DNA of 64,000 nucleotides from Malacoraja senta (Eukaryota), in NCBI GenBank assembly GCA_038087875.1, contig CM075987.1, positions 18,600,001 to 18,664,000 of the forward strand, read 5' to 3'. The notes under the pieces were generated by a model, which did not search any database, was not told the DNA's origin, and saw only the letters and a list, made by a program, of their open reading frames with translations. A program made the translations under genes and the position numbers. Position 1 is the first letter of the stretch. Each line of letters begins with the position of its first letter. Positions 9,389 through 58,426 of the stretch are shown here, in pieces.

Positions 9389-9490
9389 TTTCAGAACCTG
9401 CAGTTATTCAACGATATTACGCGTCACTGGAAGAACAATTCTTTCAGATAAGTGAGAATGAATTAACCAAAATAAATACATTTTACGCAG
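9389..9490 (+). CDS. XPR1: XPR1-like exon (human exon 3 equivalent), SPX domain
   Basis: ctccacag|TT...TACGCAG|gtaaat; SEPAVIQRYYASLEEQFFQISENELTKINTFYA, compare XPR1 ...[22 protein letters not shown]. Confidence 0.92.
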
Positions 9491-9926
9491 GTAAATTCAT
9501 GATTTTATTTTATTTTTTATATTCTTTGTCTGTGTTGTGAAATGAGGCAGTTGGAGGGAAGCAACCAATTGGAATTTATGCAAGTCAGGTTGGTGTGGGA
9601 AGGTGGAGTTGAGGCTGAGATCAAATCCAACATGATTTCACCAAATAGAACATACATCCAAAGGATTGTGAGGTCGACTTCTACTGCTTTTTGTGTTCTC
9701 ATTGCTAAGGGAGTCTCCAGCGCTGAGAATTGTACCATGTTAAACAAAACAGAGCCCAGTGCCAAAATCCACAAACATAACATCGAGAGACAAATGTATT
9801 GTAATTAGCTACTGGGCCATCAGTTCATTTCAATAGGTCTAACTAGACCAAATCTGATTCACCACTTGATCCTATGGTCTTTTCACGACTCTTTTTATAA
9901 TTGGTACTCTCCAAGACTCTGTACTT

Positions 9927-9961
9927 GGGGGGGGGGGGAGAGGGGGGGGGAGGGGGGGGGG
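9927..9961 (+). repeat. Poly-G tract with G-quadruplex potential, in an XPR1-like intron
   Basis: G12-AGA-G9-A-G10. Confidence 0.85.
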
Positions 9962-10914
9962 TTAAAGACTGGGGCAGAGCACAAATCACCAATGAAGAAC
10001 TTTGTTGAAGTTAAAAACAATGGCATTGAGCTAATAAAGGACTTCTCAATGAAACAAAAAAGTGTTAAGAGGAACTCAGCAGATCAGGCAGCATCTGTGG
10101 AGGAAAAGGACATGACATTTCGGGTCAGGATCCTTCTTCACATCTATTGCCTGAACACTGAATCAGTCTGAAGAATGGTCCCAATCTGAAAAGTCCATTC
10201 ACTCCATAGAAGTTGCTTGACTTTCCGAGTTCCTCTGGTGCTGATTTTTGTTCAAGCATGTGTAGTTTCTTGTCTCAACAACAGTGTTGGATTGAGAGTA
10301 GAACTAATGGAGGATAAAGACCAGAACTAAACACATTGTTTCCATGTGGAATTTTACTGCAATTCTACATCCTGAAAAACTGTACCTCAAATTAAAAATG
10401 GTGACAATTAAATTAATTACAAATAATTAGCTCCAACTTGGACTCTGCTGAGTTTAATTAATCTTTTACTGAATAGTGTTGCAAAACATCAAGAAGAAGG
10501 AAAAAAATCAGATCATTTAACCGACGTAACTGCTTTATCTAAAATTACATCTCAGGGAACCAATAGGACTCCTTGGCTTGATGTGGAGGTTACTTCATCA
10601 GTTGGGACTTCTCATCTAATTTCTGGCACCAGAGACAGGCACTGCCTCTGGGTAATGCTGTATAATTCTGACCAAAGTCAACTATAATTAAAAAGAGTCA
10701 CACTATCCACTTAAAATTAAAAATGGGCACTAGCACTTCATAATCTGAAGAAAATGTTATTCTACATCCAGGATCTTTCTTGCATTCACCTCTTCTCTTG
10801 CCTATCATCAAACATTGATGGGCACAGTGCAAATCTCGCGAGTTGGTACACCCGTCAATGTTTCACACAAAGTATGGGCATCCTTGAGCGCTGGGCAGAT
10901 GGAAGGGAATTTTA

Positions 10915-11098
10915 TGTGTAGGAAGGAACTGCAGATGCTGGTTTAAATCGAAGATAGACACACAATGCTGGAGTAACTCAGCAGGACAGGCAGCATCTCT
11001 GGAGAGAAGGAATGGGTGACGTTTTGGGTCAAGACCTTTCTTCAGACTGATGCTGCCTGTCCCGCTGAGTTACTCCAGCATTTTGTGTCTATCTTCGA
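10915..11098. mobile_element. Penelope-like tail with inverted partial duplicate
   Basis: tcgaagatagacac...gcagcatc is mirrored by gatgctgc...gtgtctatcttcga. Confidence 0.75.
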
Positions 11099-11333
11099 AG
11101 GGAGTTTTATATCCAATCTCCTGCTCCAGTTGCAGGTACCAGGTCTATTGATCCATAACAAACAACCCAAGCAATCCTGCAAGTTATTAATCATGTATTG
11201 TTCCTAATATTCCATGGTGAATTCCTTACATCTTTTACTCACCGACTCACACTGTACAGTACATTAATAAAAATAATTCTGATCTTGCGCATTGCAGCTT
11301 AATGAAATACATCTTGCCTTTCTACATCTTCAG

Positions 11334-11551
11334 AGAAACTTGCAGAGGCCCAAAGAAGATTAGCAACACTACAGATTGAACTTGAAGCAGTATTTGATGC
11401 CCAGAGAGCGATCGAAGCAAGATCAGCAGGGCACTGGAGGAGCATCCTTCTTAAAGCACACAGGCACCGGGCACGACACAAGACCATGTGTGACCTGAAA
11501 CTGGCCTTCAGTGAACTCTACCTTAGTCTAGTCCTACTGCAGAATTATCAG
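11334..11551 (+). CDS. XPR1: XPR1-like exon (4), SPX domain
   Basis: cttcag|AG...TATCAG|gtatgt; EKLAEAQRRLATLQIELE...DLKLAFSELYLSLVLLQNYQ. Confidence 0.95.
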
Positions 11552-11689
11552 GTATGTGAAGGCTGTTTCAGCCCGTCAAAATGCACCATCCACTCTGATG
11601 GATGGGATCCAGTAGAAACAAATTAAAATGTCCCTTAATGTCATTAAAGAAATGTTCAGGTGGTGTGTGCAGGACGTACCAGAGACTTT

Positions 11690-12305
11690 GAACATAGAAC
11701 TTAGTAAAGCACAGGAACAAGCACCGCAGCTCACAATATCTGTGCCAAACATGACACAAAGTTCAATAATATCCTCTGCCTGTACATGATCCATATACCT
11801 CCATTCCCTGCAAAGTCACGTGCCCATCTAAAAGAGGCTAAAAGCCTCTTACAATGCCACTATCGGATCTGCCTCCACCACCACCCCTGACAGTGTTCCC
11901 ACCACGTGTGTAAAAAAACACTTGCCTGCACATTCCTTTAAATGTTGCCCATCTCACCTTAAAACGATGCCCTTTGGTCTTTCACATTTCCACCTTGGGG
12001 AAAAAGGTTCTGACTATCTATCCTGTCTATGCCATTTATAATTTTATATACTTCGACGCCACTGAACCTGCGGCATTCCATAGAAAAGCTCTTCTTGTAG
12101 CCAATACCCTCTAATCCAGGCAGCATCCTGGTAAACTTCTTCTGCGCCCTTTCCCATGCCTCCACATCCTTCTTGTACTGGGGTGACCGAAACTGCACAC
12201 AAATCTCCATATACTGCCTAAAGAAAGTCCTAAAGAGCTGCATCACGACTTCCTGACACTTATATTCGATACCCCGACCGATGAAGGCGAGCACACATGC
12301 CTTCT
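11690..12305 (-). mobile_element. CR1/HER1-type LINE 3' fragment
   Basis: ORF 11959-12294(-) ...QFRSPQYKKDVEAWERAQKKFTRMLPGL, typical CR1 ORF2 C-terminus, plus shared 3' tail. Confidence 0.85.
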
Positions 12306-12363
12306 CTGTGTATAAGTCATTACTAACATTGCCTAGACATCGAGAATTAAAAAAAAAAAAAAA

Positions 12364-12765
12364 TTATAAGTATTTTTATTAGAAGCATGTATACAAATAA
12401 TAATGAGCGACAATTTAATTACAGATTTCTTACATAGCTTCAGTTTTTTTTAAATATTTTTTTTTTAGAATAAAGATAGAGAAAAAGATGAGAGAAACTA
12501 ATATTAAAAAAAGGAGACGCAAAAGGAAACTATCAATAACAAGATTGTGGAGATAGATCCAGGAAATGTTGAGTATAGCTATTCATCCAATCCCAAACTC
12601 AGGTTTCAACCCTGATCTTGTGTTAAACCAATTCACTTTTTCAAAAATTCAATAAATGGAGACCATATTCTAACAAATAATTCTGGTTTGTCAATTAAGA
12701 CAAATCTTATATTTTCCAAATGCAATGACACTGAGAAATTTAATGCACCATGTTAAACATGGGTC
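12364..12765 (-). mobile_element. L1-type LINE 3' fragment
   Basis: Minus strand reads LHLENIRFVLIDKPELFVRIWSPFIEFLKK* (stop 12635-12633), like fish L1 ORF2 ends, followed by a T-rich UTR and AATAAA. Confidence 0.55.
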
Positions 12766-13189
12766 AAAGAGAAAGTCTCTGAATGGTCAGTGGTATCACG
12801 GCCACCTTCAGATTCTCCTCCTCAGCTACACACCAGGGGTGTAGAGTTATACAGCACAAAACCTGTGCTTTGGCCAATCTCATCCACGCTGACCAAGATA
12901 CCCCACCTAAGCGAGTCCCATACTTGTCCAAATGTCTTTTAAATGTTGTTATTATGTCAACCTCAACACCCTTCTTGATTCCACCCATCTCCTTTACCGA
13001 CCAGAGCTCATCTATTGAATTAATAACCATGGATTTGTTGATTCTTTGTTAACCAGTAGCCCATTAATAACCATAACTTTCTGCAGTGAATTTAACCAAT
13101 GATTAACAAGCAAGGTTTTAAGAATAACGAGGATGATGAGGGACAGGATCAGCTTGCTCTTGTGGTTTGAGACTCAGTGCGTTGAATTG

Positions 13190-13440
13190 AATTGAAAGAT
13201 ACAGCATTGAATCTGGCCCTTCAGTCCAATGAGTCCACACTGACCATCATACTCTAGTTCTATGTTATCCCACTTTCTCATCCAACACACTAGGGGCAAT
13301 TTACAGAGGCCAACTAACCTACAAACTCACATGACTTTGGGAATGAGAAGGGAAACCCAGGCGGTCACAGAGAGAGCATGCAAACTTCACACCGACAGCA
13401 AACGGGGTCAGGATCAGATGCAGGTCTCTTGCACTGTGAA
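13190..13440 (-). mobile_element. HE1-type V-SINE, degenerate
   Basis: Reverse-complement similarity to 18646-18900. Confidence 0.6.
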
Positions 13441-13601
13441 GTTGTTGATTACCCTCTGAATGCATCAGACAATGCGTATGCCAGGAACAACACACTTGAA
13501 CGCACTCTTTGCAAGTTCTGGCCAATTACATTATTTCCACCTCCCCACCTATCCGACATCTCAAGAGATCACTGACAAAGCAACCTCGACTTCTCTTCCA
13601 G

Positions 13602-13751
13602 AATCTCAACCTCACAGGTTTTTCCAAAATTCTGAAGAAATACGATAAGATGTTCAACGCATCGAAGGGGGCGGGCTGGCAGGCAGCCCTGGTGGAGGGC
13701 TCAGCAATGTACACCAGCAAGAAGATAGACCAGCTAATAAGCGAGGTGGAG
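13602..13751 (+). CDS. XPR1: XPR1-like exon (5), SPX lysine surface cluster
   Basis: ttccag|AAT...GTGGAG|gtaagt; [50 protein letters not shown]. Confidence 0.95.
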
Positions 13752-15160
13752 GTAAGTGCGGGCAGGACTGAAGCGGTCCCTTCTCGTTTGCTAAGAGGCA
13801 GATATGATATCCCCGTTCAGATCAAAGTTCTACCATCACCGTCTCTCTCCAGGGCTACCAGGCAAGAAATTGCAGTCATGCATCCATCTAGGGTTGGGAT
13901 AGACTGCTGCAGGCTTTTACAGGAGTTATCACCACTGTGCTTGTAGCTATAGCACTGGGAGGCGTGATGGGTCCCCAATATACACTGCAGGATGAGATCT
14001 GACCAAAAACATTGCGTCAGACGCAATGAACTGCAGATGTAAGGATTCTTGAGCATTGTGCTTGGAACTTTTGCCTTCTAAAGTTGTGGAAAGTTATAGA
14101 CTCAAATAGCAATTATGCACACCTTTCTAAAAATACCCTAATATTTAAAGTGGAGACACAAAGAACTGCAGATGCTGGAATCTGGAACAAAACACAAAGT
14201 GCTGGAGGTACTCTGCAGGTCAGGCAGCATCTGTGGAGCAAATGGACAGGCAATGATTTGGGTCAGGACCTTTCTTCAAACAGGGCTAGGGGGAGAAAGC
14301 TGGTAAAGAGATGTGGGGGTAAGGCAAAGCCTGGCAAGTGATAGGTGGATATAGGTGAAGGGAGGGGGTGGCTGGCAGATAGGTGGAATAAGTGACAAAG
14401 GCCAGAAGTGAAAAGGAGGCCAAAAGCTCACTGATAAGGAGTGGATGAATGAAATGTTATGCTGGGAGGGAGGAATATGGCAGGGTCTTTTACAAGCACT
14501 GAAGGGAGAATGTGAGGGTAATGGCAGATACAATGGTATTTACATAGAGTGAAGCATGTAGAGAGCGGGTGAGAGGTATTTATAAGGAGTCCAGTGTGCT
14601 AGTATAGTCAGCGAGCTAGCTGCTCAGATTATAGGACACCTAGAGGACAGTTATTGGTGAATATAGCAGAGTATTGATAGAATGCGGCATACAATTGGGT
14701 GGGGCGGGGTATTTGTGGACATTGCCTTGCCATGCAAAGGTGGACGCAGAGTGTTTACAGAATGCCACAGAGGGGCAAAGGAGAAGGTTATTTATGGATA
14801 ACCTGACATACATCTTCTTAAGGCAGACTTCACCCGACTTTGAGCAAGAAACCTTTCTTTGATTTTATGACGTGCAAAACTGAGAAGCAGCTGCCCAAGG
14901 AGCACAGGAGGAACCAACCCTGTCCTGACCCAATGATACCAGACAGAGACACCAGCACGGCCATTGTGGGAACAATCCATACATGCTGATCGCTCCAGGG
15001 CACCGCTGGTAGCTCTTCTAGTGACAGAACCTTGGAGTTCCAGTGCCATAATCTGGGCCATAAACCAGCATCAGAGAGCACAGATACAAAAGTAGAAATG
15101 ATGATACTTGTTACCGGAGTAAAGAGTTTGTTGTACTGAGGATGTAAAATTGTTCCACAG

Positions 15161-15244
15161 TCACTCTACACCAATCAGCTGGCAGGAGGGGACAGAGCAC
15201 GGGCAATGAAGAGGCTTCGGGTTCCACCACTAGGAACAACCCAG
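15161..15244 (+). CDS. XPR1: XPR1-like exon (6)
   Basis: ccacag|TCA...ACCCAG|gtcagg; SLYTNQLAGGDRARAMKRLRVPPLGTTQ. Confidence 0.95.
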
Positions 15245-16940: not shown

Positions 16941-17022
16941 CCTACCCCAATGTGGACCACCTTTCGTGTGGGAGTGCAGTGTGGACTCATCGTGGCATTA
17001 TCTGTGCTGATAATCATCAAAG
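16941..17022 (+). CDS. XPR1: XPR1-like exon (7), first transmembrane helix
   Basis: ctctcag|CCT...AAAG|gtaagc; PTPMWTTFRVGVQCGLIVALSVLIIIK. Confidence 0.93.
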
Positions 17023-18040: not shown

Positions 18041-18228
18041 GTCTCCATGTATCCCAGAAAGCCAGCGTGTGGCCCCTCCTGCGGGCTTACAGAGGCGGCT
18101 TCATTTTGATTGAGTTTGTCTTCCTCTTGGGAATTAACATCTATGGCTGGAGAAAGGCAGGAGTAAACCATTGCTTGATCTTTGAACTTGATCCCAGGAA
18201 CCACCTCTCCCATCAGGATTTGTTTGAG
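18041..18228 (+). CDS. XPR1: XPR1-like exon (8)
   Basis: cctctag|GT...TTTGAG|gtaagt; [53 protein letters not shown]. Confidence 0.95.
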
Positions 18229-19758: not shown

Positions 19759-19848
19759 TTACTGGCATGGGAATAGCTGCGATTTTGAGAGCATGTCCTC
19801 AGTAGAATAAGCCCTCATACTGACATCTTGTCACCATCTCTCTTTCAG

Positions 19849-20028
19849 TTGGCAGGTTTCCTGGGAGTTCTCTGGTGTTTGAGTCTACTCGCCTGCCTTT
19901 TCAGTGCTTACATCCACACTCCAATGTCAGTCAGTCCCTTGCTCCTGTATGGTTTCATGGTGCTTCTTCTCGTGAACCCAACCAAAACCTTCTACTACAA
20001 GTCCCGCATCTGGTTATTGAAGGTTCTG
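19849..20028 (+). CDS. XPR1: XPR1-like exon (9)
   Basis: tttcag|TTG...GTTCTG|gtaagt; [18 protein letters not shown]...[18 protein letters not shown]. Confidence 0.95.
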
Positions 20029-20831: not shown

Positions 20832-21000
20832 TCCCGTGCAGTAACCGCCCCCTTCCGTAAAGTGAGTTTTGCCGATTTCTGGTTGGCCGATCAACTCAAC
20901 AGCATGGGGCCAATCTTCCTGGACCTCTGGTACTTGATCTGCTTCTATGGATTTGAGTTAAACTGGGAGAGTAACGAGGGTCTCCTGAGCCCACCTGCAG
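20832..21000 (+). CDS. XPR1: XPR1-like exon (10)
   Basis: aaacag|TCC...GCAG|gtgaga; [45 protein letters not shown]. Confidence 0.95.
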
Positions 21001-21917: not shown

Positions 21918-22112
21918 ATAAATTCATAACCAGTGGTAACTCCTATGGAATGACCTGCTTTATCCAATGTATTCCACCCTGGATCAGATTCACTCAGTGC
22001 CTCCGGAGATACAGGGACAGCCAGGATGCATTCCCGCACTTAGCAAATGCTGGAAAATACTCCACGGTTTTCATTATGGTAACCTTTGCAGCTCTGTACT
22101 CAACGGAGAAAG
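21918..22112 (+). CDS. XPR1: XPR1-like exon (11), EXS domain; GC donor
   Basis: gcacag|AT...GAGAAAG|gcaagt; [56 protein letters not shown]. Confidence 0.93.
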
Positions 22113-23435
22113 GCAAGTGAAATCAGTCTGCTGCCATCCTGGTGAGATCTAGTTGCTGTAAAACTCTAATAATCCATCATCTGGCTTACTCACGGATCGG
22201 GAATGTGAGCCAGGGGTCCAGAGTGCAGGTAGGGTGCCCAGGGTCTGGAATGCCACCCTAGCAGTGGTTGGGATCCAGATCACCAGGGTTCAGGAACATT
22301 GGTGTGGGTTTGCAACCAAAGCCAAAGTCCCGAGAGCTTGTACATTTCCTGCTGTTTAAACTCACTGGGTTCACTGGAAAATTTATTGTTCTTATGTGTA
22401 ACATGCAACAGGAGCATGCTTAGATAATAATGAGAGCAATGCCTAATGGTCTGGAAAATGGGCAAGTCTAGCACCAGAGTAGTCCCAAGGGTGTGGGGTT
22501 ATCAAGGTTTTACTATCTCTGGGTTTTCAGTCCATTTTGGATCAATGTAAAAATTGCAGATACCTGTTACTCAGTGCCAGATTGAGAGTGCTGGTATCAC
22601 AGCACTGGGCATGGTTCAGACCTGCTGGTTACCATAAGCACTGGTGCGCCTGATGCCTTCAACATACATCGCCCACTTCTCGCCCAATGTATCTGTCAGC
22701 ACTAAGAATCATATATTACAGAAACAGGCCTTTCAGCCCAACTTGTCCATGCTGATCAAAATGTTCCATCTAAGCTGGGTCCCATTCAAAATCCCTTCAC
22801 AACCTTTCATATCCACGTACCTGTTCAAATCTCTGAAATGCTGTTATAGCACCCGAGTTGAAGTTGGCTCTAAGGATATTTTCTTGGCAAATTGCTGCAT
22901 GGATTGTGAAATAGAGCTGTAGAGTCAGGCAGCACGGAAACAGGCCTTCAGCCCAACTTGTCCAGGCTGACCAAGACGGCCCATCTAGTCGAGTCACATT
23001 TACCTGCGTTTAGCCTTCCCTATCCATGTACCCAGAGTCATAGAGTGATACAGTGTGGAAACATGTAGTTCAGCCCAACTTGCCCACACTGGCCAACATG
23101 TGCAGCTACACTGGTCCCACCTGCCAGCTTTTGGTCCATATCCCTCCAAACCTGTCCTATCCATGCACCTGTCTAAATATCTTCTAAATAATTAGGGCAA
23201 ACATTTTTTGTCTTTGGCAGTGCAGACCTGAAGCTTTGTTGTCTGCAGCAGGTTTAGTTATCAAGGAGAAAGAGTTGTGCTTTCCCCCCCGTTGCCATGG
23301 TTACATGCCGTGCTGTGGCATACCGCTGGATATTAAAAAAGATCACCAACAATCCCTCCCTCCGGGTGTTGCTCAGTAATCTGTTGTTTGTGAAGCTGCG
23401 TGAGTTCTCATGTGCACCTTCCTGATCTCCCTTAG

Positions 23436-23608
23436 AACGCTCGCAGTTGACGGTTGGTGTAAAGGTTTACTTTTACCTGTGGGCCGTGACAACCTGTGTC
23501 AGCACCATTTTCACCATTGGCTGGGACCTGAAGATGGACTGGGGTCTGTTGGACAGGAAGACCAAGGAGAACAAGTTTCTGAGAGAAGACACAGTATACT
23601 ATTACAAA
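23436..23608 (+). CDS. XPR1: XPR1-like exon (12), EXS domain
   Basis: ccttag|AA...TACAAA|gtaagt; ERSQLTVGVKVYFYLW...WDLKMDWGLLDRKTKENKFLREDTVYYYK (this frame is absent from the ORF track). Confidence 0.95.
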
Positions 23609-24034: not shown

Positions 24035-24385
24035 AAAGGTTTGGATAGAGTCGATGTGGAGAGGATGTTTCCACCAGTGGGGGAGTCTAGGACTAGAGGT
24101 CATAGCCTCAGAATTAAAGGACGTTCTTTTAGGAAGAACCAAAGGACACAGGTTTAAAATACGAGGGGAGTGTGGAGGACATATGGAACAAGGTGGCAGA
24201 GGAGGTAGTTGTGGCAGTACTATAATAGCATTTAACAGATATTTGGATAGATACGTGGATAGGAATGATATAGAAGGATATGGCCCAAATGCAAGCAGGT
24301 GGGGCTAGCATAGATGGGGCATTTTGGTCAGTATGGATGAGTTAGGTGAAGGGCCTGTTTTCATGCTGTATGACTGACTCTATGT
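24035..24385 (+). mobile_element. CR1-type LINE 3' fragments
   Basis: gagtctaggactagaggtcatagcctcagaattaaagg... followed by tail gaagggcctgttttcatgctgtatgact. Confidence 0.75.
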
Positions 24386-25686: not shown

Positions 25687-25823
25687 GTCTACTACTACGG
25701 TGCCATGATTCAGGATGTGATACTTCGTGTTGCTTGGGCCCTTAACATCTTGTTCACTAATACCAAACAATCGGAGGTGGCAGAAATCATCTCAACTACC
25801 CTGGCTCCGCTGGAGGTCTTCAG
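25687..25823 (+). CDS. XPR1: XPR1-like exon (13), EXS domain
   Basis: cactag|GTC...TTCAG|gtaaga; [23 protein letters not shown]...LAPLEVFR. Confidence 0.95.
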
Positions 25824-27388: not shown

Positions 27389-27598
27389 ACGATTTGTCTG
27401 GAATTTCTTCCGGTTGGAGAACGAACATCTGAACAACTGTGGCCAGTTCCGAGCAGTCCGTGACATCTCCATCATGCCCCTAACCAGGGAAAACCAGGCC
27501 ACTCTGCTGCTGCTCATGGACCAGCAGGAAGGTGTCAGGAATCGTGGAAAAGTCAAAGCTAGCAAGAGGAAAACCAACTTCTCCTTTAAAAGATCAAG
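27389..27598 (+). CDS. XPR1: XPR1-like exon (14), end of EXS domain and cytosolic tail
   Basis: ctgcag|ACGA...TCAAG|gtcagt; [31 protein letters not shown]...[10 protein letters not shown]; if unspliced, the frame stops at 27617. Confidence 0.92.
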
Positions 27599-31614: not shown

Positions 31615-31660
31615 AGTCAAAAGCTGGGAAACGAAAGTTCACATTGAAGAGATGGAGTGA
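31615..31660 (+). CDS. XPR1: XPR1-like terminal coding exon (15)
   Basis: Branch point cactaac, pyrimidine tract, then ttcag|A GTC AAA AGC TGG GAA ACG AAA GTT CAC ATT GAA GAG ATG GAG TGA = VKSWETKVHIEEME*. Phase matches the exon 14 donor; resembles human SKARDTKVLIED. Confidence 0.85.
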
Positions 31661-31818
31661 TGTGACAAAGCTGAACCAAGTTCCCTTGAAACACTTAGCA
31701 AAGGCATGGGGGCTGTTTTGAATGCTCCAAACTCATTTTGGTGAACTGAACTGTTCATTGAAGTAAAAAGACTGAAGCCACTGACTACAGAGAAAAGTCA
31801 TACTTTTATAAAACAAAA

Positions 31819-31821
<3 letters not shown>

Positions 31822-31852
<31 letters not shown>
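31822..31852. repeat. (TA)n microsatellite in the putative XPR1-like 3' UTR
   Basis: About 15 TA units. Confidence 0.95.
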
Positions 31853-31855
<3 letters not shown>

Positions 31856-32325
31856 AAAAAAATCAGCTCTTTTCAAATGACCCTGCATTGGTAGAGGGTG
31901 TTGATACTCTGCTGATCTCCTCGACATAGATCTGCTCAAAGACTCACAATCAGAGACCTTCTCTAGTTCCAATCTTGCAACACCAAACTGGCTAACTTTC
32001 CCATTGCTTTCCTCTTCTGGCAAAGAAGAACTGGTCTGGTCTCAGCACCCCTGACTCTCCTTTCCATAGTCTAACCAACCCCTCTTTTGGTGGCACAAAT
32101 GAAATCTTGTGTGGAATTACAGGTGTGAATCCTTGCCCATTTATAACATTAAGTGTAATATCAAGTTGTGGTGTTTGTAAGCACGTTATCTGGACAATCA
32201 ATGTCAAATTGTCAAATGAATGAAAGAGTTCAAGTCTTAAAGAGCTAATTAGATTTCAAGACAAAATTAAATCTGAGTTTTAAATGCAGCCAGAGATTGT
32301 CAATATTAGAAACTTGCATCACGCG

Positions 32326-32345
32326 CACACACACACACACACACA
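32326..32345 (+). repeat. (CA)n microsatellite
   Basis: About 10 CA units. Confidence 0.9.
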
Positions 32346-33289
32346 GAAAGCAGACGAACAGTTTAGATTGCTACAGCCTTTGCAGGAAGAGAGAATCTAA
32401 GACATGCAGAAGGAAAATCACCAATGCAGAATGTTTACTGTGGCATCTTGGATGTTTGAATAAACAGATTCTGCTCTGGTCTAGAGTCTCATATTTAAGG
32501 AATAACTGGTTAAGATTCCAGTATGCGATCAAAGCGATCAAAGCTGTAAAATGTGAATATTCAAATGATGGTTTGGTCTTAGTCTCACCTTACAGTTGAC
32601 TAAAGGGGAGTTTATAAAAAATGTAATTGCTGCCCCGTAGTGTTAGCCGTGTGTGGGCAGCAACGAAGTGACTCCGTGTTTTAATCCAATATGTATGTGT
32701 CTGAGTACAGTGATGTTACATAGAATCAGTTGCTTGAAGATATTAGTAATAGGCAGTTTATCAAGGCAGATCAACCTGCTCTATTTTGTGAACTAGGCTT
32801 CCATTCCAATCCTACGGACACATGAATGGATCAATAAACTTAAAACAGGGAAGGGGGGCATTGGGACAGTGGGCTTAATAGTGTTTACATTCATAAAGTC
32901 AAAAGCTGAGAGATAAAAGTACAGTGAGGAGCTGGAAAGATCCCAACAGGTCAATCAATCTACAATGCTGCCCAGCTTGGGAATGAATCAATGTCCACTG
33001 AACTCAACTGTTAGGAGGCAGTTAGCGTATGTAAATAAATTTGGTGTAAATAATTAAACATTATGAAGTTTAAGCTTGTACATAACCTTCCAGTGACAGT
33101 GCTATTTTATAATAGATAAAGGAGAATTCTATGGTTCTTGTTTCACATCATGTACATAAATAATTTTTCTGCCTTGTTTTATCTTGTGCTGGCTTGGGAT
33201 AATAAATTTCTTAGAAATAAACACGATGGATGTGTGGGAGTGATTATTCTGTGCAGGAAATCCATTGAAGATAATGGCTCTGCCACTCA

Positions 33290-33740
33290 TAATCCACTTG
33301 GGTAGCTTGCAACCCAATGGTATGAACATTGAATTCTCCAATGTTAAGCTAAACCCCCTTTTTCCCCCCATTTCTCTTCCCTGTGCTCCGCTCTGGGGTG
33401 CCCCCCCTTTGCTTCTTCCCCCCACAATTTCCTTCCACCTATATCCCTCCCTCTGGCTTCACATTTGACTTCTCTTTATCTTGCACCCTTTCATTACTAA
33501 CATTTTGCCCACCAATCTGCTAATCACATGCCCCTAACCCGTGTCCACCTATCACTTGCCAGACTTGGTCCAAACCCCACCTCTTTCCCAGCTTTCTTCC
33601 CTCCCCTCCACTGCAATCAGGAGGACGGGTCACAACCTGAAATGTTACGTGTCCATGTTCTCCGGATATGCTGCCTGAACACTGGGTGACTCCAGCACTT
33701 TTTTTTTTCTAAACTGCATCAGCAGTTCCTTGCGTTTTCC
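33290..33740 (+). mobile_element. Penelope-like element 3' end: end of the GIY-YIG endonuclease ORF plus tail
   Basis: HLGSLQPNGMNIEFSN matches the Penelope GIY-YIG C-terminal LxxLxPxGxN motif and runs into the tail family (...gctgcctga...actccagcac...). Confidence 0.7.
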
Positions 33741-34014
33741 TTGGCTACATGCTGTCGAACCATACACAGAATTTTGGTGATGGGGCGTCCTTACGGGACT
33801 TATCAGACCCATTCCAACTCATCAGCTCACCAAGCCCCACCCAAAGGCAAGAGGCGATGATGACACAATAAGGGTAATTGGGCACATGAGATTTTAATGA
33901 ACAGTGGAACAGTGACCAGTTCATGCTCTGGAGGGATCGGGTATGTAAAATTTGAGGGGAATAGAGTAGAGCATTAACAGTAGCAAGGACATCTATAACC
34001 AGAGACAGAGCTTC

Positions 34015-48969: not shown

Positions 48970-49463
48970 TCACAAGGTCCCTGCATATGTTCCATCCAGT
49001 TTCCGCATGGCTGTTTCAGATCTATTATTGGAGGAAGCTTCATCTTGTTCAAAAGTGGCGCCCGTGTTGGGCGTGTCGGGAGCCAAATTATTAGTGCCAG
49101 CAGCTTCTCTTATTACCGACTCTACCATTTCATTCTGTTCAGACGACTGGTTGGAGCTGGGGGACTCCACATCTATGTTGGCAGGGTTTGTTCTTTCTCC
49201 GAGTACAGTCCCAGGATCACTACGCTTCTCAGCTTGACTATTTTGCTCAAATGCCAACCCAGTTCCATACAGCCCAGGGTCCAAACTGTCTCCGCCACCT
49301 GCATCTCCGATCACAGTGCGGTACACCTCCACCCCGTCAGGCAGCATCGATTTAATCTTGGGCAGCCAGCGCTTGCGAACCCGTCGAGCATTAGTGCACA
49401 TGTCAGCAGCAATCACATTCATCTCACTCTCTTTGAAATTGGGAGCAAAGTTCTGACAATATA
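48970..49463 (-). CDS. NACC2: NACC2 last coding exon (BEN end and C-terminal tail)
   Basis: Minus strand tgacag|TATATTGT...; YCQNFAPNFKESEMNVIAADMCTNARRVRKRWLPKIKSMLP...DGTYAGTL*. Confidence 0.95.
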
Positions 49464-50387: not shown

Positions 50388-50975
50388 CACAAGTTCACAG
50401 GTTATAGGAGTAGAACTAGGCCATTCGGCCCATCAAGTCTACACAGCCATTCAATCATGGCTGATCTCTGCCTCCTAATTCAATTTTCCTGCCTTCTGCC
50501 CATAACCCTTGACACCGTTCTAATTAAGAAATTGTCTATCCCTAGCTTAACAATATCCACTGAAAATATCCTCTGTGGCAATGAGTTCCACAGATTAACT
50601 ACCTTCTGACTAAGAAGTTCCTCCTCACCTCCTTTCTAAAAGAGCACCCTTTAATTCAGAGGCTATGACCTCTGGTCCGAGATTCTCCCACCATTGGAAA
50701 CATCCTTTCCACATCCACTCTATGCCTTTCATTATTCTGTAAATTTCAATTAGGTCACCCCTCAACCTTCTAAACTCCAGCAAGTAGAGGCCCAGTGCTG
50801 TCAAACGCTCATCATATGTTAACCCATTCATTCCTGGAATCATTCTTGTAAACCTCCTCTGGACCCTCTCCAGAGCCAGCACATCCTTCCTCAGATATGG
50901 GGCCCAAATACGCTCACAGTACTCCAAATGCGGCCTGGCTGCGCCTAAGGGAGCCTCAGCATTACATCTCTTGCT
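50388..50975 (-). mobile_element. CR1-type LINE 3' fragment
   Basis: ORF 50625-50927(-) EYCERIWAPYLRKDVLALERVQRRFTRMIPG. Confidence 0.9.
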
Positions 50976-51159
50976 TCCACCTGGTTTTGGATATGGTGAT
51001 ACACAGCCACAATATGTTTCTGATTTTATGTACTAAATTTAAAAAAATGTCCCACGCATGCACTATTCAGCAATGATGCACGTCAATACAAGTTAATCAT
51101 ACACATTAGAGCTCTCACAAAAATGTTTGAGAACTAATTGAATTCCTTAATGTATAGAA

Positions 51160-51720
51160 GTTGGGATGTTATGTTACAGTTGCACAAGACATTGGTGAGG
51201 CCACACTTGAAGTATTGTGTTCAGTTTTGGTCACCTGCTATTGGAAGGATGTTGTTAAATTGGAAAGCAGAGAAGATATACAAGGATGTTGCCAGGACTG
51301 GAGGGTCCGAGCTATAGATAGGCTAGGACTATATTCGTTTGTGCGCATGAGGCTGAGGAGTAATCTTATAGTGGTGTGTAAACTCATGAGGGGAATAGAT
51401 TAGATGAATGCACATTTATCCAGAGTAGGGGAATCAAGAACCAGAGGATATAGATTTAAGGTGAGAGGGGAAAGATTTAATAGGAACCAGAGGGACAACC
51501 TTTTCACTCAGAGGATGGTGGGTAAATGGAATGAGATGCCAGAGGAGATGGTGGAGGCAGGTGCAATAAGAACATTTAAAAGACAATTGGACTGATACAG
51601 GATTGGAAAGGTTTAGAGGGATATGAACCAAATGCAGGTAGGCAGGATATGGGTAAACAGGGCAACTTGGTTGTCATAAGCAAGTTCAGCCGAATGGGCC
51701 TGTTTGCTTGCAGTATGACT
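51160..51720 (+). mobile_element. CR1/HER1-type LINE 3' fragment
   Basis: Frameshifted ORF2 end ...ESRTRGYRFKVRGERF...FTQRMVGKWN. Confidence 0.85.
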
Positions 51721-52328: not shown

Positions 52329-52426
52329 GTTTTACTGCATTCAAGACCCTGCTATCCAAAGGCTTTCTACTAGGGTCACTGGTGGAGGAACGGATCCCAG
52401 TGCCACAGCTATTTGCCAATGTGTTG
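52329..52426 (-). CDS. NACC2: NACC2 exon, BEN domain
   Basis: Minus strand tttcag|CAAC...AAAC|gtgagt; [32 protein letters not shown]; 159-nt intron upstream. Confidence 0.95.
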
Positions 52427-52585
52427 CTGAAAAATAATGAAAACCATCTCATTATCCTTACCGGAACTAAGAGTTTGTTGGCTAAGAAAACAAAAGAAAA
52501 CAAATTATAGCAAATCACCATGTAATATGGTTTAAATTGGCGGCAAATTTTAGGTACATAGCATGGTTGTGATTCTGTTACTCAC

Positions 52586-52691
52586 CGATCAAAGAATGAG
52601 GCAAGCAGGCGGCGAAGGAGCACCTTGTGTTTGACCCCAGCGCAGAGGTGACAGTTCATCACTTGACCCCGGGTGATATAAACCGCAGAAC
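52586..52691 (-). CDS. NACC2: NACC2 exon, BEN domain start
   Basis: Minus strand tggcag|GTTCT...GATCG|gtgagt; [35 protein letters not shown]. Confidence 0.95.
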
Positions 52692-53460: not shown

Positions 53461-54817
53461 CAATTTATTTTAAGTAAACAAAACTTGTAAATTACATTGC
53501 TGATACACCATGGTTTAAAACTCTTGCTTGCCAAAGTTGCTAATATTGCAACTTTTCTGGTATGCTTCACTGCAGTTGTATCGAGATAATATCCATTCCG
53601 GTACCCTGCACAAATTTTTTTTAATTCACCAAGGAATTGTTTGAAACAGCAGCAGCATGGTCTATGCCTGGAAACATATACCACGATGAGACCTGCTTAA
53701 TTCCTGGAAGAACCTCCGCTTATTGCTACTTCTGACCCTTTGCTGTATACTAATGCCAAAAGGCCATTAGCCTATAAAAAGAACAGTTCCCATGACTACC
53801 AAACATCAGCAACAATATAAAATGACCACTAATTTAAATAGCTAGAGATGGCAGGGAAAAGGGAGGGCAATAGATTCACTGAACGCGATATCTAAATCCT
53901 GACACCAGAGGCAGAAGCTAGGAGACGTCCTGTGCATTGTAAACATGGTGTAGGGAGAGCACGAAACCCACAGTGCTACTGATAGAAGAACCAGTCAAAA
54001 AGTGACTGGGATAGGAGCACCAGGAGCACTGAGATACAATGAGGAAATAGCCTTCAACCATGGCAGCATGCACAAGGAATCTGGGGTGGGAGGGGTTGTA
54101 AATATATGTACTGCCCAAGTGTACTCAGATGGGTACCACAATTGGAATGCGGTCAAAAAGACAAATGGGAGTGCACAAGTTAGTTCACTGTTAAGGCTTG
54201 CCTCACAAAAAAGAAGGCATGTTTGGAAGATGTCCAAACTCTGGCAAATGGTTGTGCACAGCAAGGACACCAATGCCTCCTGGATGTGTATTGCATCGGG
54301 GATTCGGGTTATTCCCATTACTCAACACTTACTGGCTCATAGGCCACATTTGTTTCTGCACAGTCTCGTACTAACCCAGCTAAACATCTGGCTACAACCA
54401 TGGTTTAAAGCTCTGAAGGAACGGCAATATGCCGCAAGGTATCAACCAGTCATGAGTAAACCACAATCTTCACTGTGCAGCAAGATGTCATTCACAAACA
54501 GACTGCTGCTCTAAATGAAAACAAGGATGTTACAAGAACCAGAGTTCACCAGAGCAAAGAGATACAGAATATTAGCAGGATGCTTCCCGCAATACGAATG
54601 GATTTGTCACACAAGAGCATTGAACTCCTGCAGTAGGGACATGGCATAATGAAACACTCTTCTGCAGGACCAGCAACATATGGCCCATCCTCCACCCACC
54701 CAAAACTCTTTCATCATGGGCAGGGTCCTGTACAGGTTACAGAGCGCCTGGAACTGATCACTAATATAATCAGCATCTGCTTAATTATTATTTTTTGCAT
54801 TTTGCACTTAATTAGAG

Positions 54818-55471
54818 TAGACAATAGGTGCAGGAGTAGGCCATTTGGCCCTTCGAACCAACACCGCCATTTAATGTGATCATTGCTGATCATCCACAAT
54901 CAGTACCCCGTTCCTGCCTTTCATCATATCCCCTGACCGCTATCCTTAAGAGCTCTATCGAACTGCATATTCTTGCTATTGAGGGAGTGCAGCGTAGGTT
55001 TACAAGCTTAATTCCCGGGATGGCGGGACTGCCATATGCTGAGAGAATGGAGCGGCTGGGCTTGTACACTCTGGAGTTTAGAAGGATGAGAGGGTATCTC
55101 ATTGAAACATAAGATTGTTAAGGGTTTGGACACGCTAGAGGCAGGAAACATGCTCCCGATGTTGGGGGAGTCCAGAACCAGGGGCCACAGTTTAAGAATA
55201 AGGAGTAAGCCATTTAGAACGGAGATAAGGAAACACTTTTTCTCACAGAAAGTTGTGAGTCTGTGGAATTCTCTGCCTCAGAGGGTGGTGGAGGCTGGTT
55301 CTCTGGATACTTTCAAGAGAGAGCTAGATAGGGCTCTTAAAGATAGCGGAGTCAGGGGATATGGGGAGAAGGCAGGAACGGGGTACTGATTGGGGATGAT
55401 CAGCCATGATCACAATGAATGGCGGTGCTGGCTCGAAGGGCCGAATGGCCTACTCCTGCACCTATTGTCTA
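54818..55471. mobile_element. CR1 3' fragment (54966-55471, +) fused to an inverted copy of its own 3' end (54818-54965, -)
   Basis: ORF remnants ILAIEGVQRRFTSLIPG...ESRTRGHSLRI; both termini read tagacaataggtgcaggagtaggcc inward. Confidence 0.88.
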
Positions 55472-58249
55472 TAATATCAGAAGCATCATAACAGTTAATC
55501 AGGCACAGTAACCTTTAAAAAGTCTGAATAATGTGCACAGCTAGCTTGAATTCAGTTTCCTTATATACATAGGGTTGCCAAAGAAAAGTGATATTTCTTC
55601 CATCAGGAACAACAGTGGGTTAAACATGACTTAGACACATAGTGTCACAATGAGCATATCCAACATTTAACCAATGGTAATTTTATTCCACCTGTGGAAA
55701 GCATGAGGTGTAAATATGCCAGTACAGCATTTATACATTCTCAATGTTATCAATAGCCCATTGGGCAGCGATGAATCAGTGTTCTCATTGTGTTCCATGT
55801 GAATACTCAGTTGAGTGTGCACAGTTCTAGTTAGGATGGAAATTCACTTTGAAAATTCCACAGAACACAAGAGTCCAGTGTTATGCTACTGCACAAGATG
55901 AATCTTGACAAAGTCCATTGTGCATCTTTCCTTAACTGGAATGTGTAAACACTTTCCAGAAATAGATAGATGGTGGCCTTTTCTCAAAGCTGCCATCTTA
56001 AGAGCAGTGTGCATGAAGGATCAGACAGCAAGGGAGAAATGATTTTGGTGTTTGCTCTGGTGAAGCATTGCACCAAATGACCAACAGTCTAATATCATAA
56101 AGCACTCAACAGGATCCAACACCTTTTACTGAAAGCCCTCAAGAACATTCCCTGCACACCACAGCTTAATTAATAACAGTGCTCTTTGAAGGTACTCCCA
56201 AAACACTGTTAGAAATATTGAAGATTTTGAATCAATGTCAAAAAATGTCAAGCTGTTGAAGACATGATAGTGTGCAACTAGGAAGTTTGTGTTCCTATGC
56301 CCCCAAAACCTCTTACCCTTTTGGAGATTAGGGTTTTGTAAGTCAGAGAAGCCTGGACTTTACATTCAGCAGGCATTGCAAGATGAGGTGGAAAAAATGG
56401 ATGCTCAAGGCAGATTAGCTGCTGACTGTGGAATTTTCAGATCAAAGGACATCGACTACACCCATCAAAACAAGTAGAGCACATTCCACTCAATGAGCCT
56501 TTTAGATGGCAATGGTGATACATCAAGGAGTGAATCATAATAAATTTGATATTTACGTATAAATGTAAAATAGATCACTATGATTAGATTTGCTATTCAA
56601 AAGGATGTTAATAGGCTTAACACTCACTTTACAAGTGTAAACAAGATTACACAAAATGGTAATTTAAATAATAATCTCAGCTCATTGCAAATTTTTGATA
56701 AATATACAAAATTTCAAGAAATGTCCCTCAACTTATGTGCCTTAGACACACTTTTTTTCTCATTGATCTTGTGGTCTTGCATGGAAATATTGTGGCTTTC
56801 CTTTATGAGACTGCTGGTTTGTCTAACAACTTTCATAACCACCAAGTCATAAATTTCATTTTGGTAGAGGAAGCCAAAAGACAACCAAAATGTAGAGCCC
56901 CTTTTATGGCAAGAAACTTTACTATTGAACATTCATATGCATGCAGCATTCATGCAAAGAAAATAGGCAAGATGAGAGAGAGGAAAGATTATTGGTCTGC
57001 AGCTGAATGCATGGTGCTCCCGAAATTACTTCTATGAGAAAATAAAATCTCTTCACAACTGAAGAGTTTTACATTTAATAGATAACTTCCACTATATCAC
57101 CGATAAAGCGTGATAGGTCTCACTGGCATTAAACATTTAACAGTTTTTAAATAATTATATTTGAGCTCTTGCACCTTTGAACTAGCTAAAATGCATGGTG
57201 ATTTATGTTGTACTCAAGCTGTTGACCTTAAGTGCTAGCTAGCTGTCATTTTACAATAAAATCCAGCTACTGCATAAAATGTAAAAAGTATATTAAAAAG
57301 CCCTATTTTTATGCAGCACTCTACAGATTGAAATATCTAAGTGCACTGAGATTGTCTAAAATCAAGTAGGCATAAGAACATAGAACAGTGCAGCAGTGGA
57401 ACAGGTCCTTCGGCACACAATGTCTGTGCTGAACATGATGCTCAGTCAAACTTCTCTTCCTATACATGATCCATATTTTTCCATAAATTATGTATCTTTC
57501 CAATGTTCAATCTGTTGGTGGAAATTTCCTTAAATTGGAGTACTCATTACAAATTTTAGACTAAACTCAAAACAAGAAGCAAAACCTTTTCATTTATTTT
57601 AGCATCTGAAGGAGCCCATAAAATAATCAAGTGTTTATCAGTAAACAGCATCAACACATGCACTTCAAGAGAGCGATGCAAGCTTCTAATTCCATTGTAC
57701 AGGAAGAGGTGTAGAGAATTTGGAAAGGAGTTCTAAAGCTTGGGGCCCAAGCACCAGAAAGCATGGTTGCCAATGAAAAAAGATTGTAGAGTGAAGAGAT
57801 CAACATTGTCATTGAGGATGTTTGCGTGGATTCAAGAGGAACAATATTGACATATTTCATTTTTCATTAGAGTCAAAATGAAGGATTCACATTGGAGGAG
57901 GGGTGGGGGACTGGAAGGTAAAAATTGCAGGATACATTTCGGATCAGCTTAGACCTCTTTTGACTACATTGCAAACACCACTCAGATCATCAATTTATTG
58001 GCTCTCCTCATTCGGGTACCACAGAAGTTCCATGCATGGCAAGCAGAGAGCAAAAGCAAAACAAAAACAAAAAATCAGAGGATTCAAACAACATAAAGCT
58101 CAAATTATTACTGAAAAGACTGTGGCATAAAATGCTCTCCCCAAACTTAATCAGGAGGCCTGGTCTAATGATAGCTTACTTTTTCAACAATGCACTGAAT
58201 GTTGTATCTTCTTCACAAGTGAAGAATCAAGGTTTTAAATGATGCTTAC

Positions 58250-58426
58250 CCGAGACAAGTTCTAGTTTCTCACCAGGGTCACCCTCAGAGTACAGCTTGG
58301 GGTGACATCTGTAACCAATCTGACTGATGAGGCTGGCAGGAAGTGCAACCAGATCACGACGGACAAGCACACAAGAACGATTTTCCACCGTCATGTGGTT
58401 TGTTAACTGTGCAACTTTCTCTTGTG
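58250..58426 (-). CDS. NACC2: NACC2 exon preceding the BEN domain
   Basis: Minus strand ttttag|CACAAG...TCGG|gtaagc; [43 protein letters not shown]. Confidence 0.93.

What the first reader, a model, noticed from the sequence alone, without database searches (positions are those of the whole stretch)
9389..58426. Probable second XPR1 phosphate exporter (retained ohnolog) next to NACC2
Seen: an intact XPR1-type gene with the human exon layout, convergent with an NACC2-type gene. The protein is much more diverged than expected for this normally conserved gene (exon 5 is about 31/50 identical by eye to the recalled human sequence), while the NACC2 BEN exons are nearly identical to human. Known: mammals have a single XPR1 at 1q25.3 near QSOX1, LHX4 and STX6; NACC2 is at 9q34.3 near LHX3 and QSOX2; 1q25 and 9q34 belong to the same whole-genome-duplication paralogon. 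Inference: this is not the XPR1 ortholog but an 'XPR2' ohnolog kept in cartilaginous fish and lost in mammals. That would be a second, uncharacterised PP-InsP-regulated phosphate export system, possibly relevant to tessellated-cartilage mineralisation or renal and gill phosphate handling.
Basis: partly seen in the sequence, partly recalled or inferred. Interest (0 to 1): 0.8.

Follow-up and report, generated by a model that had tools for sequence, protein, structure and literature searches.

The report
Ancient second XPR1-type phosphate exporter gene
This skate locus holds an intact, old sister gene of the phosphate exporter XPR1, lying between UBAC1 and NACC2; many fishes and amphibians keep it, no amniote copy turned up, and no paper found here describes it, although XPR1 is usually called the only known animal phosphate exporter.

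Summary
An intact 15-exon, 684-aa SPX-EXS gene lies on the + strand. Thirteen coding exons are in the window (9389-31660); exons 1-2 lie 8-13 kb upstream of it. It is convergent with the last four coding exons of a NACC2-type gene (58426-48970, - strand). UBAC1 lies head-to-head upstream.

The protein is 96% identical to the "XPR1 homolog" of Amblyraja and Leucoraja, but only about 60% identical to canonical XPR1, including Leucoraja's own.

An ML tree puts it in a 100/100-supported clade with chimaera, sharks, rays, coelacanth, amphibians, bichir, bowfin and some teleosts. These species also carry a canonical XPR1. An AU test rejects a chondrichthyan-only duplication (p about 1e-88).

All 15 phosphate-site residues that canonical XPR1s conserve, and most InsP8-binding residues, are kept. 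dN/dS is 0.26. A spliced contig from a close relative joins exons 9 and 10 exactly as predicted.

Retention is far wider than cartilaginous fish. A whole-genome-duplication origin rests on synteny. Canonical XPR1 is not detectable in this 1.94-Gb assembly, although related skates have it.

The gene is auto-annotated in databases, and I found no paper describing it. It is a new member of a known kind, of moderate interest.

The parts
9389..9490 (+). XPR1-paralog coding exon 3 (SPX domain). Exons 1 and 2 lie upstream of the window, at about -13264..-13196 and -8299..-8248.
   Evidence: tblastn with P0162/P0163; splice sites and assembled ORF
11334..11551 (+). coding exon 4 (SPX)
13602..13751 (+). 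coding exon 5 (SPX helix with the K158/K161/K162/K165-equivalent lysines); 31/50 identical to mammalian XPR1
   Evidence: Pfam SPX hit
15161..15244 (+). coding exon 6 (holds the R211/R219 equivalents)
16941..17022 (+). coding exon 7 (TM1 region)
18041..18228 (+). coding exon 8 (start of the EXS domain)
   Evidence: Pfam EXS; the contig in X1 starts its match at the acceptor (record 1)
19849..20028 (+). coding exon 9 (EXS)
   Evidence: joined to exon 10 in a spliced contig (record 7)
20832..21000 (+). coding exon 10 (EXS; D398/N401 equivalents)
21918..22112 (+). coding exon 11 (EXS; Q452, R459, K482, Y483 equivalents). It is followed by a GC donor, which Leucoraja also has.
23436..23608 (+). 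coding exon 12 (EXS; D529/D533 equivalents)
25687..25823 (+). coding exon 13 (EXS; R570/W573 equivalents)
27389..27598 (+). coding exon 14 (E600, R603, R604, W607 equivalents and the C-terminal tail)
31615..31660 (+). coding exon 15, with stop codon TGA at 31658-31660
31661..33755 (+). 3' flank, probably the 3' UTR; 93% identical to the Leucoraja paralog's 3' flank
48970..49463 (-). NACC2-type last coding exon (end of the BEN domain, C-terminal tail, stop)
52329..52426 (-). NACC2-type BEN exon
52586..52691 (-). NACC2-type BEN exon
58250..58426 (-). NACC2-type exon (start of the BEN region). The BTB first coding exon lies beyond the window, at about 67635-68615.

Best explanation
The + strand gene is a functional second member of the SLC53/XPR1 family. 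It belongs to an ancient vertebrate paralog group that separated from canonical XPR1 before the last common ancestor of jawed vertebrates. It sits in the UBAC1-NACC2 interval of the 9q34.3-like region, which is the paralogous counterpart of the 1q25 region that holds XPR1. A whole-genome-duplication origin is therefore the simplest reading. The protein keeps the SPX sensor domain and the 10-helix EXS pore, with all the conserved phosphate-coordinating residues. It most likely works as human XPR1 does: a phosphate-efflux pathway in the membrane, opened when inositol pyrophosphate (InsP8) binds the basic surfaces of the SPX domain. What is shown: gene integrity, clade membership, synteny, residue conservation, purifying selection, and splicing in a close relative. 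What is inferred: phosphate export, PP-InsP gating, a whole-genome-duplication origin, and any tissue role. Two InsP8-contact positions are changed throughout the clade (R157 to S/T/C/G/H, K129 to C/Q). The protein also evolves about 1.5-2 times faster than canonical XPR1. Regulation or expression has therefore probably diverged.
For: Gene model: 15 exons, 684 aa, intact. The same exon set reconstructs the Leucoraja protein P0162 exactly from its genome. Identity is 96% to the Amblyraja and Leucoraja paralog, and 59-60% to canonical XPR1 of Leucoraja, Stegostoma, Callorhinchus and mammal. ML trees (LG+C20 PMSF) give the paralog clade 100/100 support in both taxon sets. Inside the clade the branching follows the species tree, and the window gene is nested in the batoids. 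The AU test rejects all chondrichthyan copies forming one clade: delta lnL 300, p 8e-89. Both genes exist in Leucoraja, Narcine, Hypanus, Stegostoma, Heterodontus, Pristiophorus, Callorhinchus, Latimeria, Amia, Ambystoma and Rhinatrema. Synteny: UBAC1 lies head-to-head upstream and NACC2 is convergent downstream. A QSOX-type exon lies 0.26 Mb further on the same contig, and a second QSOX-type locus is on another contig. In bowfin the paralog lies beside SURF2 and a convergent BTB+BEN gene. In Brachyhypopomus it lies beside an MBF1/EDF1-type gene and a convergent BTB+BEN gene. Function: D398, N401, Q452, R459, K482, Y483, D529, D533, R570, W573, I577, E600, R603, R604 and W607 are all conserved. 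So are K26, K158, K161, K162, K165, R211, R219, K132, K216, R217, K364, K369 and K376 (residue lists from PMC11696373 and PMC11926068). Selection: dN/dS is 0.26 against Leucoraja, with exons about 97% and introns 88-92% identical. Expression: a 388-nt contig in run X1 joins exon 9 to exon 10 at the predicted junction. A 1078-nt contig enters exon 8 at its acceptor. Both are 97-98% identical to the window.
Against: No phosphate-transport, localisation or tissue-expression data exist for any member of this clade. Run X1 is only guessed to be RNA, and it comes from a relative rather than from this species. The canonical clade has weak support (82/49), and the root inside it is unresolved because the outgroups are very long. 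A whole-genome-duplication origin rests on the human gene map recalled from knowledge, plus one QSOX-type hit whose identity as QSOX2 was not tested. R157 and K129, both InsP8 contacts in human XPR1, are not conserved. dN/dS of 0.26 is fairly relaxed for this family. No canonical XPR1 was found in this assembly, so both genes could not be shown within this one genome.
Confidence: 0.82

Rival explanations
1. It is the true XPR1 ortholog of this species. It has diverged fast and moved next to NACC2, and it is the genome's only SLC53 gene.
For: No other XPR1-type locus is detectable in the 1.94-Gb assembly. This was tested with Pfam EXS, the gene's own exon, shark and skate canonical proteins, and Leucoraja canonical CDS and 3' UTR DNA. 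The positive control for the DNA search worked.
Against: The gene is 96% identical to the Leucoraja and Amblyraja paralog, and only 59% identical to Leucoraja's canonical XPR1, which lies on another chromosome. The clade has 100/100 support. The same UBAC1/NACC2 context is seen in Leucoraja, and the NACC-type neighbour in bowfin and a teleost.
Confidence: 0.02
2. It is a recent duplicate of XPR1, specific to cartilaginous fish or to skates, that diverged quickly.
For: The paralog has long branches and evolves faster than canonical XPR1.
Against: The AU test rejects a single chondrichthyan clade, p 8e-89. Orthologs exist in coelacanth, amphibians, bichir, bowfin and teleosts, in species-tree order.
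Confidence: 0.01
3. It is an ancient paralog produced by a small-scale duplication or transposition before jawed vertebrates radiated. In that case it is not an ohnolog from the whole-genome duplications.
For: Only a few paralogous neighbour pairs were seen with tools. The timing relative to lampreys is unresolved: the lamprey gene is sister to the clade at 98-99% support, but AU p is 0.10 for the alternative.
Against: The gene lies among 9q34-type genes: UBAC1, NACC2, a QSOX-type gene, and SURF2 and EDF1 in other fishes. From my knowledge of the human map, XPR1 lies beside LHX4 and QSOX1 at 1q25, which is the recognised paralogon partner of the region holding LHX3 and QSOX2.
Confidence: 0.12
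4. The gene is intact but has changed function. It may be an intracellular or regulatory SPX-EXS protein, or a phosphate pathway no longer gated by InsP8, rather than a plasma-membrane exporter like XPR1.
For: Clade-wide loss of the InsP8 contacts R157 and K129. Seven positions differ in a fixed way between the clades. The C-terminal tail has diverged. The rate is 1.5-2 times faster and dN/dS is 0.26.
Against: All conserved pore and phosphate-site residues are kept, along with 13 of 16 basic InsP8-surface residues, three of them as conservative K/R swaps in some members. Alanine substitutions in human XPR1 suggest that overall positive charge matters more than single residues (PMC11926068).
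Confidence: 0.2
5. This skate has really lost canonical XPR1, so the paralog is its only SLC53 phosphate exporter.
For: Canonical exons and 3' UTR are absent from the assembly, while a control of equal kind matches at 93%.
Against: The assembly is fragmented (6182 contigs, 1.94 Gb) and has artefacts, such as the duplicated exon 1-2 block at a gap. Stretches may also be withheld by the operators. Related skates, Leucoraja and Rhinoraja, keep canonical XPR1 at 97% identity to each other.
Confidence: 0.06

Closest known systems
Human XPR1 / SLC53A1 (cryo-EM structures such as 8X5F and 9DVJ; InsP8-gated phosphate exporter)
   Same: It has the same SPX + EXS architecture and a similar length (684 vs 696 aa), with 15 coding exons. 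It is about 60% identical. All conserved phosphate-site residues and most InsP8-binding basic residues are kept.
   Different: It belongs to a different orthology group. It lies in a different region, UBAC1-NACC2 rather than ACBD6/LHX4 (the latter from my knowledge). R157 and K129 are replaced. It evolves faster. Its function has not been tested.
Teleost xpr1a / xpr1b (zebrafish xpr1b is needed for microglia and osteoclast-lineage cells)
   Same: They are also duplicated SLC53 genes in fishes.
   Different: xpr1a and xpr1b both sit inside the canonical clade, as teleost-specific duplicates. The window gene's clade is outside it and much older. Some teleosts (Brachyhypopomus, Engraulis, Synaphobranchus, mormyrids, Siphateles) carry a third, very divergent gene that belongs to the window gene's clade.
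[quoted passage not shown] Leucoraja XP_055516106.1, Amblyraja XP_032904677.1)
   Same: These are direct orthologs, 96% identical, with the same exon structure and the same UBAC1 neighbour.
   Different: They carry automatic names that do not separate them from canonical XPR1. I found no paper that treats them as a separate gene.
Plant PHO1 family and yeast SYG1 / SpXpr1
   Same: They share the SPX-EXS architecture and the conserved pore residues. In plants the family has also expanded into several paralogs.
   Different: They are only distantly related: SYG1 matched one exon at E 7e-6. Those expansions were independent.

Membership tests
SLC53 / XPR1-PHO1-SYG1 family (SPX-EXS proteins) | N-terminal SPX domain (PF03105) | tested here: met
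   The exon 5 piece hits PF03105 at 28.8 bits, above the 27.8 cut-off. The 96%-identical orthologs P0162 and P0163 carry PF03105.
SLC53 / XPR1-PHO1-SYG1 family (SPX-EXS proteins) | C-terminal EXS domain (PF03124) | tested here: met
   Six exons hit PF03124 above the cut-off and together cover profile positions 2-316 of 330.
SLC53 / XPR1-PHO1-SYG1 family (SPX-EXS proteins) | Phosphate-coordinating and pore residues (D398, N401, Q452, R459, K482, Y483, D529, D533, R570, W573, E600, R603, R604, W607) | tested here: met
   All are identical in the window protein and in nearly all clade members. The residue list comes from PMC11696373. S404 varies even among canonical XPR1s.
SLC53 / XPR1-PHO1-SYG1 family (SPX-EXS proteins) | Basic InsP8-binding surfaces on SPX and the TM domain | tested here: inconclusive
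   13 of 16 listed residues are basic in the window protein. R157 is S and K129 is C, and both changes run through the whole clade (list from PMC11926068). Binding itself cannot be tested here.
SLC53 / XPR1-PHO1-SYG1 family (SPX-EXS proteins) | 10-TM fold, dimer, phosphate efflux activity | not testable with these tools
   The fold was not modelled, because the spliced protein has no reference id. About 60% identity to solved human XPR1 makes the fold very likely. Activity needs an experiment.
Canonical XPR1 orthology group (the human XPR1 ortholog) | Groups with canonical XPR1 of other jawed vertebrates in a gene tree | tested here: not met
   It falls in a separate 100/100 clade. The AU test rejects joining the chondrichthyan copies.
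Canonical XPR1 orthology group (the human XPR1 ortholog) | Conserved neighbourhood of XPR1 (ACBD6, LHX4, QSOX1 side of 1q25; from knowledge) | tested here: not met
   The neighbours are UBAC1 and NACC2.
Ohnolog pair from the vertebrate whole-genome duplications | The duplication predates crown jawed vertebrates | tested here: met
   Both clades contain chondrichthyans and bony vertebrates.
Ohnolog pair from the vertebrate whole-genome duplications | The two genes lie in paralogous chromosome blocks that share several other ohnolog pairs | tested here: inconclusive
   9q34-type neighbours are shown (UBAC1, NACC2, a QSOX-type exon, SURF2, an EDF1-type gene). The canonical gene's neighbours could not be read with these tools: the gene is absent from this assembly and the flanks elsewhere were too short. 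This link rests on my knowledge of the human map.
NACC2 (the neighbouring gene) | BTB + BEN architecture, and closer to NACC2 than to NACC1 | tested here: met
   The BEN exons match the NACC1 BEN structure. A BTB-type first coding exon, recognised by eye and not scanned with Pfam, lies just outside the window. Named full-coverage hits are NACC2 (E down to 2e-44), while the best NACC1 hit is 1.6e-14 over a third of the exon.

The most novel reading that the evidence does not exclude
Jawed vertebrates, and perhaps all vertebrates, ancestrally had two PP-InsP-sensing phosphate exporters. The only lamprey gene sampled groups with this clade. The second exporter ('XPR2') would have altered InsP8 contacts and its own physiological role, for example epithelial or skeletal phosphate handling. 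No amniote copy turned up, but it still operates in sharks, rays, coelacanth, amphibians and basal ray-finned fishes. In this particular skate it may even be the only SLC53 gene left.
Probability: 0.3. Interest if true: 0.65.

Novelty: new member of a known kind. Interest (0 to 1): 0.45.

Why it matters
[quoted passage not shown] This locus shows that many non-amniote vertebrates carry a second, intact SPX-EXS gene under purifying selection, with a complete phosphate pore. Axolotl, bowfin, bichir and skates are experimentally tractable species among them. Knockouts or expression studies of xpr1 in such animals cannot assume a single exporter. The clade-wide changes at two InsP8-contact residues offer a natural experiment on PP-InsP gating. 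The gene is also a clean synteny marker for the 1q25/9q34 paralogon, since it sits in the UBAC1-NACC2 interval, which from my knowledge is empty in human. Ohnologs lost in mammals are common, however, and the family and its mechanism are already known, so the surprise is moderate.

Tried and rejected
1. I hypothesised that batoids as a group had lost canonical XPR1, because none appeared in the hit list. This was rejected: the 90% cluster of P0273 contains canonical XPR1 of Leucoraja, Rhinoraja, Mobula, Hypanus, Narcine and Hemitrygon.

2. I searched this genome for a second XPR1 six ways: Pfam EXS, the gene's own exon (12), Stegostoma canonical protein (18), Leucoraja canonical protein (26), Leucoraja canonical CDS DNA (39) and its 3' UTR DNA (67). 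Only this locus or nothing was found.

3. The Pfam SPX scan of the genome returned only low-complexity open frames.

4. A Pfam UBL_UBAC1 scan of the genome found nothing. UBAC1 was instead located by alignment to the Leucoraja flank and a weak Pfam hit on the exon.

5. An ACBP scan, meant to find ACBD6 near the second QSOX-type locus, gave only three hits, none of them there. It was uninformative.

6. A search of the ESM Atlas with the NACC2 exon gave only chance phage hits.

7. No RNA run of this species is on record, so tissue expression could not be read.

8. Latimeria paralog context: no record. The bowfin canonical gene is too long to fetch. The lamprey flanks were uninformative.

10. Structure prediction was not run, because the spliced protein has no reference id and 60% identity to solved XPR1 made it unnecessary.

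Full report
WHAT IS THERE

The window is G000:C11:18600001-18664000 of a 1.94-Gb, 6182-contig assembly. The gene's closest orthologs are those of the skates Amblyraja and Leucoraja.

Pfam finds one SPX exon and six EXS exons on the + strand. One exon matches human XPR1 structures at E about 2e-25.

Using the Amblyraja and Leucoraja orthologs as guides, and reading the splice sites, I assembled a 15-exon, 2055-nt reading frame of 684 aa without any defect.

- Exons 3-15 lie at 9389-31660.
- Exons 1 and 2 lie upstream of the window, at about -13264 and -8299.
- All introns are GT-AG except a GC donor after exon 11.
- The same exon coordinates, transferred to the Leucoraja genome, reproduce its annotated protein exactly. 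The GC donor is conserved there.

On the - strand, four exons (58426-58250, 52691-52586, 52426-52329, 49463-48970) splice in frame into the BEN domain and C-terminus of a NACC-type protein.

- They match the NACC1 BEN structure 7bv9.
- The named database hits that cover the last exon fully are all NACC2; NACC1 hits are much weaker.
- Its BTB first coding exon lies about 4 kb beyond the window's right end.

The two genes are convergent. Upstream, the first exon of UBAC1 lies head-to-head with the XPR1-type gene. This was shown by alignment to the annotated Leucoraja flank and by a weak UBL_UBAC1 hit.

Both of its end coordinates are true exon boundaries, and its '31/50' for exon 5 is exact.

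WHICH XPR1 IS IT

The protein is 96% identical to 'XPR1 homolog' of Amblyraja and Leucoraja. Identity falls to 82% with the zebra shark copy, 75% with the elephant fish copy and 69% with a coelacanth 'SLC53A1-like'. It is only 59-60% identical to canonical XPR1 of Leucoraja, zebra shark, elephant fish, mammal or lamprey.

Database searches show two sets of proteins in the same species.

An ML tree of 53 sequences (LG+C20 PMSF) gives a 100/100 clade that holds the window gene together with copies from the following groups:
- chimaera, five sharks and four other batoids
- coelacanth
- Ascaphus, a caecilian and axolotl
- bichir and bowfin
- five very divergent teleost genes

The branching inside this clade follows the species tree.

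Canonical XPR1s form the other group, with weak support (82/49). The teleost xpr1a and xpr1b genes sit inside it.

A second tree, built without the longest branches, gives the same clade at 100/100.

Forcing all chondrichthyan copies into one clade costs 300 log-likelihood units (AU p 8e-89).

The one lamprey gene available is sister to the paralog clade (99/94 and 98/99). However, the AU test does not reject placing it outside both clades (p 0.10). The duplication therefore predates crown jawed vertebrates, and its timing relative to cyclostomes is open.

No amniote sequence appeared among the paralog-like hits.

SYNTENY

- The order here is UBAC1 (-), paralog (+), NACC2 (-).
- A QSOX-type ERV exon lies 0.26 Mb further along the same contig, and a second QSOX-type locus is on contig C5.
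- In bowfin the paralog lies between SURF2 and a convergent BTB+BEN gene.
- In a gymnotiform teleost it lies between an MBF1/EDF1-type gene, a PAP2 gene and a convergent BTB+BEN gene.

From my knowledge of the human map, UBAC1, NACC2, LHX3, QSOX2, SURF2 and EDF1 are all at 9q34, while XPR1 lies with ACBD6, LHX4 and QSOX1 at 1q25. These are two arms of a well-known four-fold paralogon. This is the basis for calling the gene an ohnolog. It is an inference, because I could not read the canonical gene's neighbours with these tools.

IS IT THE ONLY XPR1 HERE?

In this assembly, yes.

- Pfam EXS, the gene's own exon, and two canonical proteins that should be more than 90% identical to a skate ortholog all found only this locus.
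- The Leucoraja canonical coding DNA found only weak matches to this locus, and its 3' UTR found nothing.
- A matched control, the Leucoraja paralog's 3' flank, hit at 93% over 2.1 kb.

Related skates (Leucoraja, Rhinoraja) and four rays do have the canonical gene, on a different chromosome in Leucoraja.

The absence is most simply explained by an assembly gap or a withheld stretch. A true loss in this species is possible but unlikely. Either way it does not make this gene the ortholog.

IS IT FUNCTIONAL, AND HOW WOULD IT WORK?

I took the residues that coordinate phosphate at the three sites of human XPR1 from PMC11696373. I took the basic residues of the two InsP8 sites from PMC11926068.

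- All phosphate-site residues that are conserved in canonical XPR1s are identical in the window protein and across the clade.
- Of the 16 InsP8-surface residues, 13 are basic in the window protein.
- R157 is replaced by S/T/C/G/H and K129 by C/Q throughout the clade.
- Seven further positions differ in a fixed way between the two clades.

Against Leucoraja, dN is 0.018 and dS is 0.069, giving dN/dS of 0.26. Exons are about 97% identical and introns 88-92%.

For the same species pairs, the paralog has diverged about 1.5-2 times more than canonical XPR1.

A public run from a close relative (X1, only guessed to be RNA) contains two informative contigs, both 97-98% identical to the window:
- A 388-nt contig runs from exon 9 directly into exon 10 at the predicted junction.
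- A 1078-nt contig enters exon 8 exactly at its acceptor.

Genomic DNA cannot produce such joins, so the ortholog is transcribed and spliced as modelled.

The most likely mechanism is therefore that of XPR1. InsP8 binds the SPX domain, releases the pore, and phosphate passes along the D398-R570-W573 path. The PP-InsP sensitivity is probably altered. Transport, gating, localisation and tissue role are all untested.

WHAT IS KNOWN

The orthologs are in NCBI and UniProt under automatic names that do not separate them from XPR1.

Full-text searches found no paper describing the gene. The search terms were SLC53A2, XPR1-like, SLC53A1-like, 'XPR1 paralog(ue)', xpr1a/xpr1b, and XPR1 combined with ohnolog, shark, skate or coelacanth. 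[quoted passage not shown]

The library lacks most subscription journals, so an earlier description cannot be excluded.

I confirmed that neighbour.

VERDICT

This is a new, undescribed member of a well-known family, not a new kind of system. Interest is moderate.

Noticed in passing
upstream of the window: window coordinates about -27640..-17784 and -17583..-7530 (G000:C11:18572360-18592470); 200-N gap at -17783..-17584: The block that holds exons 1 and 2 of the XPR1 paralog is present twice, 10,053 bp apart. The copies are identical over the 3 kb compared, and a 200-N gap lies between them. Leucoraja has a single copy. This is probably a false tandem duplication made by the assembler at a gap. 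The gap was not filled.
   Followed up: partly
whole assembly G000: Canonical XPR1 is not detectable anywhere in this 1.94-Gb assembly, by protein or by DNA, although a matched control works and related skates have the gene.
   Followed up: partly
window 22113-22114; L055:44866 and L055:47678: The intron after exon 11 has a GC donor, conserved between this skate and Leucoraja. Leucoraja has a second GC donor, after exon 8, where this genome has GT.
   Followed up: yes
proteins P0093, P0149, P0036, P0131, P0348 (teleosts): Some teleosts (anchovy, a gymnotiform, a deep-sea eel, a leuciscid, mormyrids) carry a third, very fast-evolving SLC53 gene that belongs to the paralog clade. Several have lost InsP8-surface residues, and some gene models lack parts of the protein. 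This may be relaxed selection or decay.
   Followed up: partly
L056 (bowfin paralog) versus the bowfin canonical gene: In bowfin the paralog spans about 15 kb, while canonical XPR1 spans about 145 kb. That is a ten-fold difference in gene size between the two paralogs.
   Followed up: no
window 11959-12294(-), 24054-24308(+), 50625-51032(-), 51161-51595(+), 54876-55389(+), 60215-60625(-), 60750-61664(+): Many fragments of one LINE-type retrotransposon lie in the introns and between the genes. They include reverse-transcriptase pieces and a recurrent C-terminal ORF tail with the motif 'GESRTRGHSLRIKG'. A very abundant short repeat translates as '...[13 protein letters not shown]...'. Its depth in DNA runs reaches millions at 18.5-19.2 kb.
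   Followed up: no
right of the window, about +90,000..+93,700 and +111,000..+113,500 (L046, L048): Long proline/serine/leucine-rich low-complexity open frames occur on both strands, up to 650 codons. They look like simple-sequence arrays rather than genes.
   Followed up: no
G000:C11:18919702-18919869(-) and G000:C5:76245014-76247675(-): There are two QSOX-type (Evr1_Alr) loci. One is 0.26 Mb from this gene on the same contig and the other is on contig C5. The C5 region is where the canonical XPR1 neighbourhood might be expected, but it could not be read.
   Followed up: no
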